The notes beneath the pieces were generated by a model, which had not been told where the DNA came from, ran no database searches, and saw only the letters and a list, made by a program, of their open reading frames with translations. From positions 62,001 to 126,000 of the IMG/VR virus record IMGVR_UViG_3300020154_000003: a stretch of DNA of 64,000 nucleotides; one strand, 5' to 3'. Shown here in pieces: positions 27,259 to 63,677 of the stretch; within the stretch, counting starts at the first letter, position 1, and each line of letters begins with the position of its first letter. The translations under genes were made by a program, and so were the position numbers.

Positions 27259-27334
27259 TGGGGCGATGAGTAGGAGTCGAACCTACATCTGCCCGCCTCA
27301 ATGCAGGCCGTGTTACCACAACACTTCCCTCGCC
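27259..27334 (-). tRNA. atypical tRNA (His-type 8-bp acceptor, 8-nt loop CATTGAGG)
   Basis: D and T arms intact, encoded CCA, anticodon ambiguous. Confidence 0.6.
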
Positions 27335-31511: not shown

Positions 31512-31705
31512 AGTAATCGATGCGTGGTGGAATTGGTATACACTGCCTTTGAAACGCGATAAAACACATGAGCAACCAGTAAGCTGTTGTCATGATGCGC
31601 TGAGTAGTTGGACTGTCCGATGAAATCTAATCGGGCTGCGGGGGATAAACCGTGGGTTGTTTTCAACATCCAATACAGGTTCGAGTCCTGTCGCTGAAGA
31701 TTGCT
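31512..31705 (+). ncRNA. large tRNA-like RNA
   Basis: Leu-type D arm GTGGAATTGGTATACAC, T arm ACAGG-TTCGAGT-CCTGT, closing AGTAATC/GATTGCT, ~130 nt insert. Confidence 0.55.
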
Positions 31706-31895: not shown

Positions 31896-31967
31896 TGTAT
31901 GTTCGTCTAGGGGTCTAGGACACTCCCTTCATCGGGGGAAACATTGGTTCGAATCCAATACATACTC
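31896..31967 (+). tRNA. atypical tRNA (Glu-type D arm, irregular anticodon loop TTCATC[G])
   Basis: Acceptor GTATGT/ACATAC, T arm ATTGG-TTCGAAT-CCAAT. Confidence 0.55.
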
Positions 31968-31972
31968 AAATT

Positions 31973-32080
31973 GGTTGTGTAGTTTATGCGACTGTAAAAT
32001 CGGTCGGGCGTGTGATGCGCAGCATGTTTGGTTAGAATACTCTGGAATGAGAGAAGCAGGTTCGAATCCTGACACAACCG
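31973..32080 (+). ncRNA. tRNA-like RNA with D-loop insertion
   Basis: Acceptor GGTTGTG/CACAACC, T loop TTCGAAT, non-canonical anticodon loop. Confidence 0.55.
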
Positions 32081-33519: not shown

Positions 33520-33522
33520 CTT

Positions 33523-33599
33523 ACGACAGAATAATCACAAGTGGTGCTTGTGGCTTCCGTGCTTTGGAAGTGATCATGGTTCGATTCCATCTGTCGTTA
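33523..33599 (+). tRNA. atypical tRNA-like element (loop GTGCTTT)
   Basis: ACGACAG/CTGTCGT acceptor, 6-bp D stem, T loop TTCGATT. Confidence 0.5.
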
Positions 33600-33605
33600 C
33601 AACAT

Positions 33606-33693
33606 CGCGGGATAGAGTAGTGGCCTAACTCGTCAGTCTCATAAGCTGAACCGTCTCATAAGGATGGCGTTGGTTCGAATCCAACTCCCGCTA
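33606..33693 (+). tRNA. tRNA-fMet-like(CAT) with extra CAT-bearing arm
   Basis: CGCGGG acceptor with C1 mismatch; GTCTCATAAG occurs twice. Confidence 0.8.
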
Positions 33694-33830
33694 CAAAATT
33701 TGTTAAACTTAAAGGTATGTATTATGGATGTCCAAAATGTGGTTCAACTCAAGTAAGTGTTCTAACAGAAAATTATTATATCTGTTTGGGTTGTAACAAT
33801 ACATGGACTGAAAATATAAAAAATAAACAT

Positions 33831-40277: not shown

Positions 40278-40441
40278 ATGTGAGATTGGAATTTGCGTGT
40301 TGTCGATCATTCGTTCAACTACGAGTGCGACTACACCATGCGATCACACATGCCAATACTACGATAAAATGAAAAAGATGAAACGAAAACAATAAAACTA
40401 CACTACCAGTGAGTCATGTCACGGGTGTGTAGTTAAAAAAC

Positions 40442-40529
40442 GCATCCGTGGCAGAATGGAGAATGATGCCCCACACTTTTAATGTGGACTGTCGTAAGAC
40501 TAACGTAGGTTCGATCCCTACCGGATGCA
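40442..40529 (+). tRNA. tRNA-Lys(TTT) with long variable arm
   Basis: CCACA-CTTTTAA-TGTGG plus GTC-GTAA-GAC arm. Confidence 0.8.
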
Positions 40530-40591
40530 CAAACGTAGATTTATGCGGTGAATAGAGACGCTATTCATCGCAGAATATGCGGAGATTAGTC

Positions 40592-40663
40592 GCCTCCTTA
40601 ACTCAATGGTAGAGTACCATACTTTTAATATGGGAGTTATCAGTTCGAATCTGATAGGGGGTA
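40592..40663 (+). tRNA. tRNA-Lys(TTT)
   Basis: CCATA-CTTTTAA-TATGG. Confidence 0.9.
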
Positions 40664-40666
40664 CTA

Positions 40667-40888
40667 GGGCTTTGCAGATTGTTTCTCAATTGCATAGAAC
40701 ATGTGCCCATATCAAACAAGGGTTCATAGAAATTGAAATACGGGTTGACTTTCGGTGTGGAGAACCGAGCCGCCTATAGGGGCGGTGCCATTGTGCTAAG
40801 GTAAAATAATGTAGAATGCTGCTGAATAGAATAGATGCGCATAAAGATTCAGTAAGGTCTACAGTAGGTTCGAATCCCCTGCAGCCCA
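40667..40888 (+). ncRNA. large structured RNA with tRNA-like ends
   Basis: GGGCT/AGCCC-A ends, GGTTCGAATCC T loop, several internal helices. Confidence 0.55.
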
Positions 40889-40894
40889 CAATAT

Positions 40895-40967
40895 ACCTTC
40901 GTAGCTTAACTGGTAGAGTAGGTGACTCTTAATCATCGGGTTGTGGGTTCGAGTCCCACCGGAGGTA
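40895..40967 (+). tRNA. tRNA-Lys(CTT)
   Basis: GGTGA-CTCTTAA-TCATC. Confidence 0.92.
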
Positions 40968-41272
40968 CATGAATGAAATTAATACCATATGTATGGATTG
41001 TGGAAAAGAGTGTGAACGATGGCAAATCGTAAATACTGCCATGATCGGAAAAGTATGGGAAGTGTGGTGTTATTGTAAGGAATGTAACGTTGAAACTTTT
41101 CATCCTTTTGAGGGTGGAGAAGATGATTAAAAAAAACAATGTTATGAATATTGCGTATAAGTTATAAAGTTCGTAATATTGTCTTCCCAATCGCAGTTAA
41201 TTCTAAGGCGTAGAATGTCACGATAGGAATAAGGTTATATCAAAATGAGGGAGTAGCAATACTTCCTCACAT

Positions 41273-43406: not shown

Positions 43407-44315
43407 TTAATACTCACCCTTGCTTACTTGGAACACTTTAAGTCCGTTTTCTCTCCACATGTTGACAACTGGTTGACGATCCTCCAGTACTGCCCGGACA
43501 GAATATTTCCCCTTCACATTTTCCACCCACAATTCTCTCTTTACGACAATATCCTTACGGAAATCATCCATCTTACGCATCAACAGCAGGTCATACTCAA
43601 CACCATATGTTCTTAGCGACAGTTCGGTGCCCTCACGGGATTCCTCACTTCTACCAGTACAGATGATGATCGTGTAACCAGCAGCTTTGTAACAAAGATA
43701 GGTTTCGTATACAACCTGATCAAGATCATCCCGATCAACTTTATGCCAATCGAAATAACCACGCTTACCGTTCGCGTGAAACAATGTGCCATCCAGATCA
43801 ATCATAACGGCTTTAGGAAGCGCAGGATCGAATTCTGGTTCTTTGTACACGTAAGTCTTTTTAGACTGGTTTTGCAAAGCAAAGCTGTCCATTAAGATCA
43901 TGTAGTCTTCGTACATTTTCTTGATAACTTCCTCACCGACTGGTCTTTCACGAACACTGTCCCTCTCAACTGCCTTCTCGAATGAGATGTCAAATACCAT
44001 GAATTCAACGTCCGCACGATATTCCACGTACTTGATCATATCCTCAATGTATCTGGATTTGACGTGAGTAGCGTCAAGCAGGATGTTAAGTCTTCTATCC
44101 AAAGCCACATCGATGGCGTTCAAAACCAATTGAGTAATCATATCCTCAATCTTTGGTTCGCAAAATCCTTGATCCTTCAACATATAGCGGAAGTCATCCC
44201 GGTTAATTCTCACATAATCAGGGTTTTTGCGGACATATTCCTTTGACCACGTTGATTTACCTGCTGCAGGGATTCCGATAAGGATTTTGACGATTTGATT
44301 CTTTTTCTGTGCCAT
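43407..44315 (-). CDS. pseT: polynucleotide 5'-kinase/3'-phosphatase (T4 PseT/Pnk)
   Basis: GIPAAGKSTW...RINRDDFR kinase; DLDGTL, TGR, EDRQPVVNMWR HAD phosphatase. Confidence 0.93.
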   Translation of the reverse strand: MAQKKNQIVKILIGIPAAGKSTWSKEYVRKNPDYVRINRDDFRYMLKDQGFCEPKIEDMITQLVLNAIDVALDRRLNILLDATHVKSRYIEDMIKYVEYRADVEFMVFDISFEKAVERDSVRERPVGEEVIKKMYEDYMILMDSFALQNQSKKTYVYKEPEFDPALPKAVMIDLDGTLFHANGKRGYFDWHKVDRDDLDQVVYETYLCYKAAGYTIIICTGRSEESREGTELSLRTYGVEYDLLLMRKMDDFRKDIVVKRELWVENVKGKYSVRAVLEDRQPVVNMWRENGLKVFQVSKGEY

Positions 44316-48487: not shown

Positions 48488-48802
48488 ATGAATTATTTAG
48501 AAAAAGAAATAGCCCTTTTCAAAAGGAGAAAACAACTTTTGAACCAGCCAATATTGAAAGTTGTTGGGGAAGGTTGTCAAGCAATTAGCGAATTTCAATG
48601 GATTGGAAAAGTAATCGGTTTCGAAGAAGATAAGGAAAAGGGTTGGACTGTGGCAGTCATCAAAATTTTGAAACATAATCGTTCATACGGTGATGCCAGA
48701 GACGCTAAGGAGGATGAAATTTATACTTATCCAATAGCGAACAAGTATTACATGATCAATGACATTCAAAACGTTGATGGTGTATGGATACTTTACACAT
48801 AG
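48488..48802 (+). CDS. hypothetical protein
   Basis: MNYLEKEIALF... Confidence 0.55.
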   Translation: MNYLEKEIALFKRRKQLLNQPILKVVGEGCQAISEFQWIGKVIGFEEDKEKGWTVAVIKILKHNRSYGDARDAKEDEIYTYPIANKYYMINDIQNVDGVWILYT

Positions 48803-48812
48803 AAATGCGGAT

Positions 48813-49874
48813 ATGTTACTAACTAGAGATCAATTCAGGGAAGGTGTCTTTAAAAGAGATAAATACAGATGTGTCGTGTGCTTTAATCCTGCAGTTGATG
48901 CTCACCATATCATTGAAAGAAAATTATGGGATGACGGTGGATACTATTTGGATAACGGGGTTTCTCTTTGTGAACGTTGTCACATGAAAGCAGAACAAAC
49001 GATTATTTCTTGCGATGAGTTAAGAAATTCTGTTGGTATCACAACTAATCATTTACCAGCAATATTGTTTGATCGATTGATGGATGACAACAGAATCACG
49101 AATATAGGAAAGGTAAGTTTCGATAAATGGGGTAACCTAATACTGGCAGACGGTAGCCGTAGACCGGGGCCAATGTTTAATACGGAACAGGTTCAAAAAA
49201 TCATAAAGCAAGCCAATTTATTACATCTGTTTGTGGAAGATAAATATGTAAAATATCCAAGGACGTATCACTTACCATACAGCGAAAAAGCCTCTGCAGA
49301 CGATAAAAGATTATCCAGTACTGAGCAATTCGCAGGTAAGGAAGTGGTAGCAACCATCAAACTTGATGGGGAAAACACCACTTTGTATCAAGATCATATC
49401 CATGCAAGGTCTTTGGATTCAGCACATCATCCCTCTCGCGATTGGGTTAAAGGTTTGTGGGGAAGTTTCAAACATGAAATACCTGACGGTTGGAGAATTT
49501 GTGGTGAGAATGTTTACGCACTGCACACAATACCCTACAACAACTTAGAAACATACTTCTACGTTTTTTCCATATGGGATAATACGAATACCTGCCTTTC
49601 GTGGGATGAAACGGTTGCATACTGTGAAATGCTCGGACTAAAAACAGTACCCGTAATTTATCGTGGTGATTTTGATCAAGCGAAAATACAAGCTGCTTTT
49701 CCTGCAACACACAATGGTGATCCCACTGAAGGATATGTGGTTAGACTGACCGAACGTTTTCATTACGATGAGTTTGAAAATTCGTTAGCTAAATATGTGT
49801 CAAAGTCCTTCATTATCGAAGGCGCACAACATTGGATGCAGAATGCAATAATACCAAACAAGCTTTCTTCTTAA
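48813..49874 (+). CDS. HNH domain fused to ATP-dependent RNA ligase
   Basis: RDKYRCVVC..DAHHI..NGVSLCERCH; KYPRTYHL, KLDGEN, ICGEN, EGYVVR, AKYV. Confidence 0.88.
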   Translation: MLLTRDQFREGVFKRDKYRCVVCFNPAVDAHHIIERKLWDDGGYYLDNGVSLCERCHMKAEQTIISCDELRNSVGITTNHLPAILFDRLMDDNRITNIGKVSFDKWGNLILADGSRRPGPMFNTEQVQKIIKQANLLHLFVEDKYVKYPRTYHLPYSEKASADDKRLSSTEQFAGKEVVATIKLDGENTTLYQDHIHARSLDSAHHPSRDWVKGLWGSFKHEIPDGWRICGENVYALHTIPYNNLETYFYVFSIWDNTNTCLSWDETVAYCEMLGLKTVPVIYRGDFDQAKIQAAFPATHNGDPTEGYVVRLTERFHYDEFENSLAKYVSKSFIIEGAQHWMQNAIIPNKLSS

Positions 49875-52059: not shown

Positions 52060-52143
52060 GCCGATGTCGCATAGTGGTTGATTGCACCTGACTTGTAATC
52101 AGGAAGATAATATCTCGCGGGGGTTCGAATCCCTCCATCGGCT
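52060..52143 (+). tRNA. tRNA-Thr(TGT) with long variable arm
   Basis: CCTGA-CTTGTAA-TCAGG. Confidence 0.85.
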
Positions 52144-52159
52144 CAAGAAATTTTAAAAC

Positions 52160-53089: not shown

Positions 53090-53263
53090 TGTAGAGTGGC
53101 GAAATTGGCAGACGTTGCCCATCGGTCTCATGGGAGGGGAGCAAGAAATAAAGATGAAACAATGTTGTTTGTTGGTTGGAAATCAATAAACGGGTGGCGA
53201 AAGAAATTTTAACATTAAAGTAATCCTAATCTCCCCGTGTAGGTTCGACCCCTACCTCTACAG
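53090..53263 (+). ncRNA. tRNA-like RNA with ~95-nt variable-arm insertion
   Basis: TGTAGAG/CTCTACA acceptor, D arm, CCCAT-CGGTCTC-ATGGG, insert closed by GGGGAG/CTCCCC, T arm. Confidence 0.65.
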
Positions 53264-57486: not shown

Positions 57487-57576
57487 TCTTGGGTTGCTAT
57501 AGTGGCCGAATAGTCCAGACTGTTAATCTGGTGAACGCAAGTTCCATCGCAGGTTCGACTCCTGCCCCAAGAGCCA
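57487..57576 (+). tRNA. tRNA-Asn(GTT) with long variable arm
   Basis: CCAGA-CTGTTAA-TCTGG, GAAC-GCAA-GTTC arm, encoded CCA. Confidence 0.85.
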
Positions 57577-61539: not shown

Positions 61540-61612
61540 GTCTTAGTAGCACAATTGGCGGTGCAACGATCTCTAAAATCGGAGGATGCGGGTTCGATCC
61601 CCGCCTAAGGCA
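61540..61612 (+). tRNA. amber suppressor tRNA (CTA)
   Basis: GTCTTAG/CTAAGGC acceptor; CGAT-CTCTAAA-ATCG. Confidence 0.85.
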
Positions 61613-61613
61613 C

Positions 61614-63585: not shown

Positions 63586-63658
63586 GAGAGTATGGCTCAG
63601 TGGTTAGAGCAAGGACTTCTAAACTCCTAGGTCGTGGGTTCGAATCCCACTACTCTCT
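63586..63658 (+). tRNA. amber suppressor tRNA (CTA)
   Basis: GAGAGTA/TACTCTC acceptor; AGGAC-TTCTAAA-CTCCT (C31:C39 mismatch). Confidence 0.75.
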
Positions 63659-63677
63659 CTCAATAAAATAAAAAGTT

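What the first reader, a model, noticed from the sequence alone, without database searches (positions are those of the whole stretch)
40667..40888. 222-nt multi-helix RNA with tRNA-like termini among the Lys tRNAs
GGGCT...AGCCC-A ends and a GGTTCGAATCC loop enclose helices TCAATT/AATTGA, TCGGT/ACCGA, CCGCCT/GGGCGG, TGCTGAAT/ATTCAGTA and TGTAGA/TCTACA. It lacks the G3:U70 pair of tmRNA. Candidate new ncRNA co-induced with Lys/Tyr tRNAs.
Basis: partly seen in the sequence, partly recalled or inferred. Interest (0 to 1): 0.6.

Follow-up and report, generated by a model that had tools for sequence, protein, structure and literature searches.

The report
Phage tRNA-like RNA, giant extra arm
Among the lysine tRNA genes of an uncultured 366-kb soil phage lies a conserved 147-base RNA that is shaped like a tRNA but cannot read a codon and carries a large extra arm. 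The 222-base unit first proposed is this RNA plus a separate 72-base conserved piece in front of it.

Summary
The helices and the GGTTCGAATCC loop are really there, but the 222-nt unit is not supported. Relatives split it into two modules.

- **Module A (40667-40738)** recurs in sister phage G001, where tRNA-Lys(CUU) follows it directly.
- **Module B (40742-40888, 147 nt)** recurs without module A in other jumbo-phage lineages (L049, L064). In L083 it recurs with at most a weak module-A-like stretch upstream.

It has a D-like arm, a 5-bp hairpin with a non-conserved 5-6-nt loop, a 24-nt conserved purine-rich strand, a 54-nt two-helix extra arm and a T arm.

Across four lineages 93.5% of pair cells are standard pairs. 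Twelve pairs change on both sides, against 0-5 in slid controls.

Rfam and ARAGORN call nothing. It is not a tmRNA: G3:C70, no conserved ORF, no SmpB. It is not a Y RNA either.

The closest known thing is T4 species 1 RNA (rnaC), a tRNA-like stable RNA in the T4 tRNA cluster whose function is still unknown.

Most likely it is a non-decoding tRNA mimic matured by the tRNA-processing enzymes. A counter-defence decoy or scaffold role is inferred only. Expression is unshown.

The parts
40592..40664 (+). tRNA-Lys(UUU), the upstream neighbour; a 3-nt spacer CTA follows it
   Evidence: ARAGORN; Rfam tRNA at 65.1 bits
40667..40738 (+). Module A: a 72-nt conserved leader or spacer element (blocks CAATTGCATAGAAC and GGGTTCATAGAAATTGAAA). 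It is separate from the tRNA-like unit.
   Evidence: 80-85% identical in sister phage G001, where tRNA-Lys(CUU) follows directly, and 96% identical in L044. Structure support is weak: 1 compensatory pair in 18, with a positive covariation term. No sigma-70-like promoter. A weak colinear match lies upstream of module B in L083.
40739..40741 (+). 3-nt spacer TAC between module A and module B
   Evidence: 40739 T>A and 40741 C>T in a soil variant, while both flanks are conserved (table 3)
40742..40888 (+). Module B: the 147-nt non-decoding tRNA-like RNA (the whole unit)
   Evidence: Covariance models R1 and R2 find full-length homologues in L044, L049, L064 and L083. 93.5% of cells are paired and 12 pairs change on both sides. 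It is the only copy in the 366-kb genome.
40742..40748 (+). Acceptor-like stem, 5' strand GGGTTGA. It pairs with 40881-40887 (GCAGCCC). A40888 stands at the discriminator position.
   Evidence: Pair 4 is U.G or A-U, pair 6 is G-C or A-U, pair 7 is C-G, G-C or U.G; the stems are perfect in L049 and L083
40751..40769 (+). D-like arm: stem 40751-40755 with 40765-40769, and a 9-nt loop UGUGGAGAA with G18 and G19 at 40759-40760
   Evidence: Pair 13:25 is G-C, C-G or U.G. The loop is 9 nt in all lineages.
40770..40785 (+). Hairpin at the anticodon-arm position: 5-bp stem CCGCC/GGCGG with the 6-nt loop UAUAGG
   Evidence: The stem is 100% paired, with one compensatory pair (C-G to U-A). The loops are UAUAGG, CAAAAA, AGUAA and AUGAA, that is 5-6 nt and not conserved.
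40786..40809 (+). Conserved single-stranded junction UGCCAUUGUGCUAAGGUAAAAUAA, with the core RAGGUAAA
   Evidence: Invariant GGTGC..CA and AGGTA.A blocks in the four-row alignment of three lineages; L083 agrees. A one-base insertion after 40807 is tolerated in L044 and in soil variants.
40810..40863 (+). Extra arm at the variable-region position. Outer helix 40810-40815 with 40858-40863; inner helix 40820-40827 with 40847-40854; 19-nt apical loop 40828-40846 with conserved AAUAG...CAUAAA.
   Evidence: The outer helix has 3 pairs and the inner helix 4 pairs with changes on both sides. A40863>G in soil variants keeps a U.G pair.
40864..40880 (+). T arm: G-C, G-C and a closing G.U/A-U pair around two invariant mismatches; T loop UUCGAAU at 40869-40875
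   Evidence: U54 and A58 are invariant. The loop is UG(U/C)AAUU in the other three lineages. 18/55 co-varies (G/U against A/G). 19/56 is G-C, A-U, G-C, A.C.
40895..40968 (+). tRNA-Lys(CUU), the downstream neighbour, after the 6-nt spacer CAATAT
   Evidence: ARAGORN; Rfam at 63.5 bits

Best explanation
The 222-nt stretch is two adjacent elements.

(1) Bases 40742-40888 encode a 147-nt tRNA-like RNA that does not decode.
- It keeps the parts of a tRNA that processing enzymes and other tRNA-binding proteins recognise. These are a 7-bp acceptor-like stem with A at the discriminator position, a T arm with the U54/A58 T-loop core, and a D-like arm placed to form the elbow.
- A 5-bp stem with a variable 5-6-nt loop stands where the anticodon arm would be.
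- About 78 nt are inserted at the variable-region position: a conserved purine-rich strand plus a two-helix arm with a conserved apical loop.

(2) Bases 40667-40738 are a separate conserved 72-nt leader or spacer.

Shown: homology and covariation in four phage lineages, constant placement in the tRNA-Lys cluster, and independence of the two modules.

Inferred from established tRNA biology:
- The unit is transcribed with the tRNA array.
- RNase P cuts 5' of G40742.
- The 3' end is trimmed, and CCA is added by the phage's own PolyA_pol-family enzyme or the host's. CCA is not encoded, as for the phage's tRNAs.
- The RNA accumulates as a stable species.

Inferred function (about 0.25-0.3): it acts as a tRNA mimic or natural tRNA scaffold. 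It engages a tRNA-binding host factor, most plausibly a tRNA-targeting defence nuclease or its sensor, without offering a cleavable anticodon loop. The conserved extra arm would supply specificity.

The confidence figure below is for identity, extent and maturation, not for the decoy function.
For: Split into two modules:
- G001 has module A followed directly by tRNA-Lys(CUU), and no module B anywhere in its 371 kb.
- L049 and L064 have module B without module A.

Homology:
- Model R2 was built only from the window lineage.
- It finds L049 (84.8 bits), L083 (75.4 bits) and L064 (71.9 bits) over their full length.

Structure:
- 93.5% of 170 cells are paired.
- 12 of 34 pairs change on both sides, against 0-5 in slid controls.
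- No shuffle in 500 reaches the observed score.

Terminal stem: acceptor stems are perfect in L049 and L083.

Non-decoding:
- Loops of 6, 6, 5 and 5 nt with unrelated sequences.
- With the extra arm removed in silico, ARAGORN draws a cloverleaf only at a relaxed threshold, and with an abnormal anticodon loop.

Elbow:
- D loop is 9 nt in all lineages.
- U54 and A58 are invariant.
- 18/55 is G/U or A/G.
- 19/56 is Watson-Crick in 3 of 4 lineages.

Context:
- Same strand as the tRNAs, with spacers of 3-16 nt.
- In 3 of 4 lineages it lies between tRNA-Lys(UUU) and tRNA-Lys(CUU).
- Pnk-type PNKP at 43407-44315 and an RNA ligase at 48759-49874 lie nearby.
- Relatives have Rnl1 and a PolyA_pol-family (CCA-adding-type) gene next to the cluster.
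- The genome holds a PolyA_pol-family gene.

Presence differs between close relatives: the neighbouring proteins of L049 and L050 are 84% identical, yet only L049 has module B. Accessory counter-defence loci typically behave this way.

Precedents:
- T4 rnaC and rnaD sit in the T4 tRNA cluster (PMC3014915).
- Phage tRNA-Lys and tRNA-Tyr neutralise PARIS and retron defences (PMC11464382, PMC11555353, PMC10264068).
Against: - No expression or end-mapping data. All runs were available only as contigs, and the one genuine RNA run did not cover the element.
- There are only four independent lineages, and the alignment used for counting was fitted to the model's structure.
- The T stem has two invariant mismatches.
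- Three lineages lack the canonical UUCGAAU loop.
- L083 breaks the 19:56 pair (A.C).
- Nothing ties the RNA to any nuclease. The host is unknown.
- The non-conserved short loop argues against mimicry of a specific anticodon loop.
- The strongly conserved junction strand and apical loop point to a specific partner that was not identified.
Confidence: 0.62

Rival explanations
1. One 222-nt RNA (40667-40888) is closed by GGGCT/AGCCC, and all five helices lie in one molecule.
For: The 5-bp complement exists. RNAfold uses it, extended by GCAG/CUGC, in the MFE of the 222-mer. In the window lineage, and possibly in L083, modules A and B are adjacent.
Against: - The fold is no better than shuffles (z -0.93).
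- The pairing is one of three equally good partners.
- GGGCT is not conserved in G001, which has AGGTG.
- L049 and L064 carry the tRNA-like unit with perfect 7-bp stems starting at the equivalent of 40742 and have no module A.
- The spacer 40739-40741 varies while both flanks are conserved.
Confidence: 0.06
2. A natural tRNA scaffold. The tRNA-like frame serves only for processing and stability. The working part is the conserved junction strand (RAGGUAAA, Shine-Dalgarno-like) and extra arm, which bind a ribosome, an mRNA or a phage or host protein unrelated to tRNA-targeting defence.
For: The most conserved unpaired sequence lies in the junction and the apical loop, not in the tRNA-like core loops. 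At least one more expanded tRNA-like unit with the same layout but an unrelated arm exists in the same genome and is conserved in G001: e5, 53090-53263. A second, e2, has only an acceptor stem and a T arm shown.
Against: No target was identified. Complementarity to the 16S 3' end is only 4-5 nt, and its register differs between lineages (read from the sequences). The constant position inside the tRNA-Lys cluster is left unexplained.
Confidence: 0.2
3. A working, decoding tRNA. It could be a class II tRNA, perhaps Tyr-derived, with a giant variable arm, or a tRNA gene with an intron that is spliced out.
For: The acceptor stem, D arm, T arm and discriminator A are tRNA-like. tRNA-Tyr genes rank first by end similarity for two of the three lineages scored, with small margins. 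L064 can be drawn with a 7-nt loop CAGUAAG that holds GUA (read from the sequence).
Against: - The loops are 5-6 nt when the invariant C33:G40 pair forms, and their sequences are unrelated across lineages.
- No consistent U33 or purine-37.
- ARAGORN in intron mode finds nothing in L049 or L064, and only an inconsistent relaxed hit in the window.
- The Rfam tRNA model gives no hit even at E<=10.
Confidence: 0.05
4. A reduced tmRNA-like RNA: a tRNA-like domain plus a short reading frame, acting in trans-translation.
For: A tRNA-like domain joined to an internal insert. In the window and L049 an SD-like motif is followed by AUG and an 11-codon frame if UAG is read through.
Against: - G3:C70 in all lineages, so the AlaRS determinant is absent.
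- The AUG reads AAG in L064 and L083, so the frame is not conserved.
- ARAGORN tmRNA mode finds nothing in the three lineages tested.
- The Rfam tmRNA model matches only 11 nt of the T loop, at 5.8 bits.
- No SmpB gene in the phage.
Confidence: 0.02
5. A decaying tRNA pseudogene or a selfish tRNA-derived insertion with no function for the phage.
For: Patchy distribution: absent from G001 and from the locus in L047, L050 and L063. It sits at a different place in L049.
Against: About 68-77% identity is kept between lineages whose neighbouring protein is only 52-61% identical. Helices are maintained by compensatory changes, and unpaired blocks are invariant. It is single-copy per genome.
Confidence: 0.05

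Closest known systems
Bacteriophage T4 species 1 RNA (rnaC, 139 nt) and species 2 RNA (rnaD, 119 nt)
   Same: - Small non-tRNA RNAs encoded inside a phage tRNA gene cluster, on the tRNA strand, with spacers of a few bases.
- rnaC ends with a canonical T arm (CCGGG-UUCGAAU-CCCGG) and an acceptor-like closing stem, and its size is similar.
- Their function is still unknown (PMC3014915, PMC12685909).
   Different: - No detectable homology: model R1 gives no hit in the T4 tRNA region at E<=10.
- As drawn by RNAfold, rnaC has one long hairpin where the D and anticodon arms would be. Module B keeps a D-like arm, an anticodon-position hairpin and the elbow contacts, and puts its insert at the variable-region position.
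Class II tRNAs (bacterial tRNA-Tyr, Leu, Ser) with long variable arms
   Same: Acceptor stem, D arm, T arm, discriminator A and an extra arm that leaves between the anticodon-position stem and the T arm. Weak end similarity to the phage's tRNA-Tyr genes.
   Different: The insert is about 78 nt; natural variable arms reach roughly 20 nt (own knowledge). The loop at the anticodon position has 5-6 nt and is not conserved. It fails the Rfam tRNA model and ARAGORN.
tmRNA tRNA-like domain
   Same: A tRNA-like acceptor and T-arm domain joined to a large internal insert. Phage-borne examples exist (own knowledge).
   Different: No G3:U70, no conserved tag frame, no pseudoknot series, and about half the usual size. 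The D arm and a second hairpin are retained. No hits from the Rfam or ARAGORN tmRNA models.
Bacterial Y RNA YrlA (RF02553)
   Same: A tRNA-mimicking non-coding RNA found next to RNA-repair genes (PMC4201824).
   Different: In YrlA the termini form the Ro-binding stem and the tRNA-like module is internal (own knowledge of the YrlA literature, not checked here). Here the termini form the acceptor stem. The phage has no TROVE/Ro gene, and the YrlA model gives no hit at the element.
Phage counter-defence tRNAs (T5 tRNA-Lys against PARIS; tRNA-Tyr against retron Eco7)
   Same: Phage-encoded RNAs of the Lys/Tyr group that deal with tRNA-targeting immunity. The present RNA always lies in the Lys/Tyr tRNA cluster (PMC11464382, PMC11555353, PMC10264068).
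   Different: Those are functional, decoding tRNAs that replace cleaved host tRNAs. Module B cannot decode, so it could act only as a mimic or decoy, which is untested.

Membership tests
tRNA (Rfam RF00005 / ARAGORN) | 7-bp acceptor stem closed by the two ends, followed by a discriminator base | tested here: met
   The stem is 94.3% paired over 5 sequences, with 3 covarying pairs, and A follows it in all.
tRNA (Rfam RF00005 / ARAGORN) | T arm with a T-loop motif, and D-loop/T-loop elbow contacts (18:55, 19:56) | tested here: inconclusive
   U54 and A58 are invariant. The canonical UUCGAAU occurs only in the window lineage. 18/55 co-varies. 19:56 is Watson-Crick in 3 of 4 lineages. The T stem has two invariant mismatches.
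tRNA (Rfam RF00005 / ARAGORN) | 5-bp anticodon stem with a 7-nt loop (U33, anticodon, purine 37) | tested here: not met
   The loops are 6, 6, 5 and 5 nt with unrelated sequences.
tRNA (Rfam RF00005 / ARAGORN) | Score at or above the family threshold | tested here: not met
   No RF00005 hit over the element even at E<=10. ARAGORN finds none, with or without introns.
tmRNA (RF00023) | G3:U70 alanine identity pair | tested here: not met
   G3:C70 in all five sequences.
tmRNA (RF00023) | Conserved tag reading frame with a resume codon and a stop | tested here: not met
   The candidate AUG frame of the window and L049 is lost in L064 and L083, which read AAG.
tmRNA (RF00023) | Model score or ARAGORN tmRNA call | tested here: not met
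   5.8 bits on 11 nt of the T loop, against a gathering score of 47. ARAGORN -m finds nothing in the three lineages tested.
YrlA / bacterial Y RNA (RF02553) | Ro60/Rsr (TROVE) partner gene and a Ro-binding terminal stem | tested here: not met
   No TROVE domain in the 366-kb genome, while the control genomes respond. The termini form an acceptor-like stem.
YrlA / bacterial Y RNA (RF02553) | Model score | tested here: not met
   No hit over 40742-40888. The best hits in the genome are ordinary tRNAs at 24 bits or less, against a cut-off of 69.
T4 rnaC-type stable RNA of phage tRNA clusters | Encoded within a phage tRNA array on the tRNA strand with short spacers; T arm and acceptor-like closing stem at the 3' end | tested here: met
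T4 rnaC-type stable RNA of phage tRNA clusters | Sequence or structure homology to rnaC or rnaD | tested here: not met
   Model R1 gives no hit in T4 68000-76000 at E<=10.
T4 rnaC-type stable RNA of phage tRNA clusters | Accumulates as a stable, RNase P-processed RNA during infection | not testable with these tools
   Only assembled contigs were available, and no RNA cover of the element was seen.

The most novel reading that the evidence does not exclude
These soil jumbo phages encode a class of 'expanded tRNA mimics'. Each has a tRNA frame with a dead anticodon-position loop and a large, lineage-conserved arm grafted at the variable region. Module B is one; e5 at 53090-53263 has the same layout; e2 at 31973-32080 may be another. 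They would be matured like tRNAs and act as RNA anti-defence factors that trap or blind tRNA-targeting immune nucleases such as PrrC/RloC-, PARIS-, retron- or Schlafen-type systems. That would also suggest a function for the 50-year-old orphan T4 species 1 RNA.
Probability: 0.2. Interest if true: 0.8.

Novelty: new variant of a known kind. Interest (0 to 1): 0.58.

Why it matters
Phage tRNA clusters are now seen as counter-defence arsenals, but only decoding tRNAs have been given that role. T4's tRNA-like species 1 RNA has had no function since the 1970s.

This study defines a covariation-supported, non-decoding tRNA-like family that no RNA database holds. It sits at a fixed place in the tRNA-Lys cluster, among RNA-repair genes, and is gained or lost between close relatives. 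That gives a concrete and testable case for RNA-level tRNA mimicry in phage-host conflict.

It also shows that standard tRNA finders miss a whole layer of tRNA-like genes in jumbo-phage arrays. At least three more occur in this window.

Tried and rejected
Database and finder searches with no result:
- Rfam at gathering thresholds and at E<=10: nothing over the element except spurious miRNA and plastid-UTR hits and an 11-nt tmRNA T-loop match.
- ARAGORN in tRNA, intron and tmRNA modes, also at relaxed thresholds: nothing consistent.

Searches for relatives that failed:
- Phage GenBank BLAST: only tRNA-Lys matches.
- Exact 3'-end pattern in IMG/VR: none.
- The 19-mer of module A in IMG/VR: G001 plus four chance hits in coding DNA.
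- Gapped module A pattern in JGI metagenomes: only the window's own contig and G001.
- Hairpin pattern in IMG/VR: none.
- Hairpin pattern in GTDB genomes: 10 chance hits, best 17 bits.
- 3'-end pattern in IMG/VR: one chance hit.
- The Zn-ribbon neighbour found only G001.
- P0005 had no DNA available; P0008, P0009 and P0010 lie in other genomic contexts.

Ideas rejected:
- Mini-ORF or tmRNA-like tag, including read-through of UAG by the phage's CUA tRNAs: two lineages lack the AUG.
- Module A as a cloverleaf, a small ORF (the ATG reads ACG in G001) or a sigma-70 promoter.
- Y RNA.
- Origin from tRNA-Tyr: only marginal similarity, kept as a lead.

Expression: the runs labelled metatranscriptomic are probably DNA, and the true RNA run covered only conserved tRNA parts from other organisms.

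Full report
**Setting.** The window is bases 62001-126000 of a 366,038-bp IMG/VR virus record rated complete. It carries a major head protein, a portal and a large terminase, and 52 tRNA genes, so it is a jumbo phage. Sequencing runs that hold the locus are soil metagenomes. The finding lies between tRNA-Lys(UUU) 40592-40664 and tRNA-Lys(CUU) 40895-40968, on the same strand, with spacers of 3 and 6 nt. A Pnk-type polynucleotide kinase-phosphatase (43407-44315) and an RNA ligase (48759-49874) lie nearby. In relatives the same tRNA-Lys cluster sits among RNA ligases, a PolyA_pol-family (CCA-adding-type) enzyme and metallophosphoesterases.

**The observation.**
- As one 222-nt molecule the fold is not better than chance: MFE -61.5 kcal/mol, z -0.93.
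- Rfam (4227 families) gives no hit at gathering thresholds. At E<=10 it gives only spurious matches plus an 11-nt tmRNA T-loop match of 5.8 bits.
- ARAGORN finds no tRNA, intron-bearing tRNA or tmRNA.
- The 3' strand GCAGCCC has three equally good upstream partners, at 40667, 40742 and 40780.

**Comparison splits the element.**
- A sister phage, G001 (IMGVR_UViG_3300032157_000001, 371.5 kb), has a terminase 71% identical.
- G001 aligns from tRNA-Lys(UUU) through the first 72 nt of the element at about 80% identity. It then continues directly into tRNA-Lys(CUU), so 40739-40888 has no counterpart there.
- The neighbouring 587-aa protein has many homologues, and their contigs were fetched.
- L044, a 98%-identical soil variant, carries both parts.
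- L049 carries a 73%-identical copy of only the 3' 147 nt, placed after a long tRNA-Lys(CUU).
- A covariance model then found the same unit in L064. A last pattern scan led to L083, a 362.6-kb IMG/VR phage.
- In L064 and L083 the unit again lies between tRNA-Lys(UUU) and tRNA-Lys(CUU).
- G001 lacks the unit in its whole genome. L047, L050 and L063 lack it at the locus.
- The window genome has a single copy.

The stretch is therefore module A (40667-40738), a 3-nt spacer that varies in soil variants, and module B (40742-40888).

**Anatomy of module B** (positions counted from 40742):
- acceptor-like stem 1-7/140-146, with A147 after it
- D-like arm 10-14/24-28 with a 9-nt loop
- hairpin 29-33/40-44 with a 5-6-nt loop
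- single-stranded junction 45-68 with the conserved core RAGGUAAA
- extra arm with outer helix 69-74/117-122, inner helix 79-86/106-113 and an apical loop of about 19 nt holding AAUAG...CAUAAA
- T arm 123-139.

**Support for the structure.**
- Model R2 was built only from the two window-lineage sequences. It recovers L049, L083 and L064 full length at 84.8, 75.4 and 71.9 bits.
- On the resulting alignment of 5 sequences from 4 lineages, 93.5% of 170 pair cells are standard pairs.
- 12 of 34 pairs change on both sides, against 0-5 when partners are slid by 1-3 columns. No shuffle in 500 reaches the observed covariation score.
- Every helix except the three-pair T stem has at least one compensatory pair.
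- The alignment was fitted to the model, which favours the structure. The slid controls and the independent MAFFT alignment show the same pairs for the acceptor, D, hairpin and outer helices.
- Acceptor stems are perfect in L049 (GGGAUGC/GCAUCCC) and L083 (GGGAUAG/CUAUCCC). This fixes the 5' end at the equivalent of 40742.

**How tRNA-like is it?**
- With positions 50-122 cut out in silico, ARAGORN draws a cloverleaf only at a relaxed threshold, and with an abnormal anticodon loop.
- U54 and A58 of the T loop are invariant.
- D-loop positions 18 and 19 and T-loop positions 55 and 56 read GG/UC, AA/GU, AG/GC and AA/GC in the four lineages. So 18/55 co-varies and 19:56 is Watson-Crick in three of four. 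This suggests a tRNA elbow but does not prove one.
- Against a decoding role, the hairpin loops are UAUAGG, CAAAAA, AGUAA and AUGAA.
- The T stem has two invariant mismatches. The invariant AGG of the junction could pair with the invariant CCU of the 3' T-stem strand. I could not test this alternative.

**Rejected readings.**
- tmRNA: G3:C70 everywhere. The SD-AUG frame seen in the window and L049 is lost in L064 and L083 (AAG). There are no model hits, and the phage has no SmpB gene.
- Y RNA: no TROVE gene and no YrlA hit at the element.
- Intron-bearing tRNA: no consistent ARAGORN model.
- Pseudogene: conservation of 68-77% with compensatory changes, while the adjacent protein is 52-61% identical.

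**Closest known.** T4 encodes rnaD (119 nt) and rnaC (139 nt) directly after tRNA-Arg in its tRNA cluster. rnaC ends in a canonical T arm and an acceptor-like stem. Their roles remain unknown (PMC3014915; PMC12685909). Module B works like this kind of RNA but is not a detectable homologue. Its architecture also differs: the D arm and hairpin are kept, and the insert sits at the variable region.

**Mechanism.**
- Inferred maturation: co-transcription with the array, RNase P cleavage at G40742, 3' trimming and CCA addition. CCA is not encoded, as for the phage's tRNAs, and a PolyA_pol-family gene is present.
- Function is not shown.
- I favour, at about 0.25-0.3, a tRNA mimic or scaffold that engages a tRNA-binding factor of phage-host conflict. 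Three observations point that way: the fixed position in the Lys/Tyr cluster, the RNA-repair neighbourhood, and the presence/absence differences between close relatives.
- Published precedent shows that phage tRNA-Lys and tRNA-Tyr neutralise PARIS and retron defences (PMC11464382, PMC11555353, PMC10264068).
- A scaffold for an unrelated RNA function is nearly as likely, at about 0.2.

**Module A.**
- It is 80-96% conserved in G001 and L044, which is as conserved as the flanking tRNAs.
- It lacks convincing structure, an ORF or a sigma-70-type promoter.
- The 83 nt upstream of module B in L083 align weakly and colinearly with it.
- TTGAAATA directly precedes module B in the window, L049 and L083. 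The related TTGAAAC precedes tRNA-Lys(CUU) in G001.
- It may be a leader or processing element. Its role is open.

**Expression.** Only assembled contigs could be laid on the locus. DNA-type soil runs cover the locus, with variants that preserve pairing (A40863>G gives U.G). The one real RNA run covers only generic tRNA parts.

**Verdict.** This is a real, previously uncatalogued tRNA-like ncRNA family, a new variant of the T4 species-1 kind.

Noticed in passing
window 53090-53263 (+): e5 is a second expanded tRNA-like unit of 174 nt, missed by ARAGORN and Rfam. It has a perfect 7-bp acceptor TGTAGAG/CTCTACA, a D arm with GG, and a hairpin CCCAT-CGGUCUC-AUGGG without U33. It also has an extra arm of about 95 nt closed by GGGGAG/CUCCCC, and a perfect T arm. 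G001 has a copy at 75% identity with 8 compensatory pairs.
   Followed up: partly
window 31973-32080 (+) and 33522-33599 (+): Two more uncalled tRNA-like units. e2 (108 nt) has a 7-bp acceptor GGTTGTG/CACAACC and a T arm, with a 91%-identical copy in L044. e3 (78 nt) has a T arm and is 81-86% conserved in L047 and L050. T-arm-like motifs also lie at 31679 and 51720, just upstream of tRNA-Asp and tRNA-Asn.
   Followed up: partly
window 40442-40530; also 33606-33694, 52060-52144, 57487-57576: tRNA-Lys(UUU) of 89 nt has a class-II-like long variable arm. Long Lys(UUU) and Lys(CUU) forms are conserved beside normal-length ones in L047, L049, L063, L064 and L083. Unusually long tRNA-Met, Thr and Asn are also present. 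Their identity and charging are unclear.
   Followed up: partly
window 27259-27333 (-) and 31896-31967 (+): ARAGORN reports 'tRNA-???' with two-base anticodons, meaning otherwise normal cloverleaves with 6-nt anticodon loops. These are further candidates for non-decoding tRNA-like genes.
   Followed up: partly
window 61540-61613 and 63586-63659 (+): Two tRNA(CUA) amber-suppressor genes. Long ORFs in this window are nonetheless intact under code 11, and reading TAG as sense extends few of them.
   Followed up: partly
window 40575-40588; L044:529-613; L049:7040-7110; L063:8985-9030: The motif TGCGGAGA(T/A)TA, often within short hairpins, recurs a few bases upstream of tRNA or module 5' ends in the Lys cluster of several lineages. 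L044 has an 84-nt insert made of such repeats between tRNA-Lys(UUU) and module A.
   Followed up: no
window 40380-40440 and the equivalent place in all relatives: A conserved block AAACGAAAAC(G/A)ATAAAAC is followed by a hairpin (CTACAC...GTGTAG) and TTGAAAAAAC, immediately upstream of the first tRNA-Lys. It is a candidate promoter or leader of the Lys/Tyr array.
   Followed up: no
window 48759-49874 (+): The RNA ligase (PF09414) carries an N-terminal HNH endonuclease domain. Relatives have a plain 215-227-aa ligase next to the tRNA-Lys cluster.
   Followed up: no
window 40969-41130 (+): A 53-aa four-cysteine Zn-ribbon ORF starts immediately after tRNA-Lys(CUU). It is conserved in that position in G001, L044, L047 and L064 and has no Pfam family.
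   Followed up: partly
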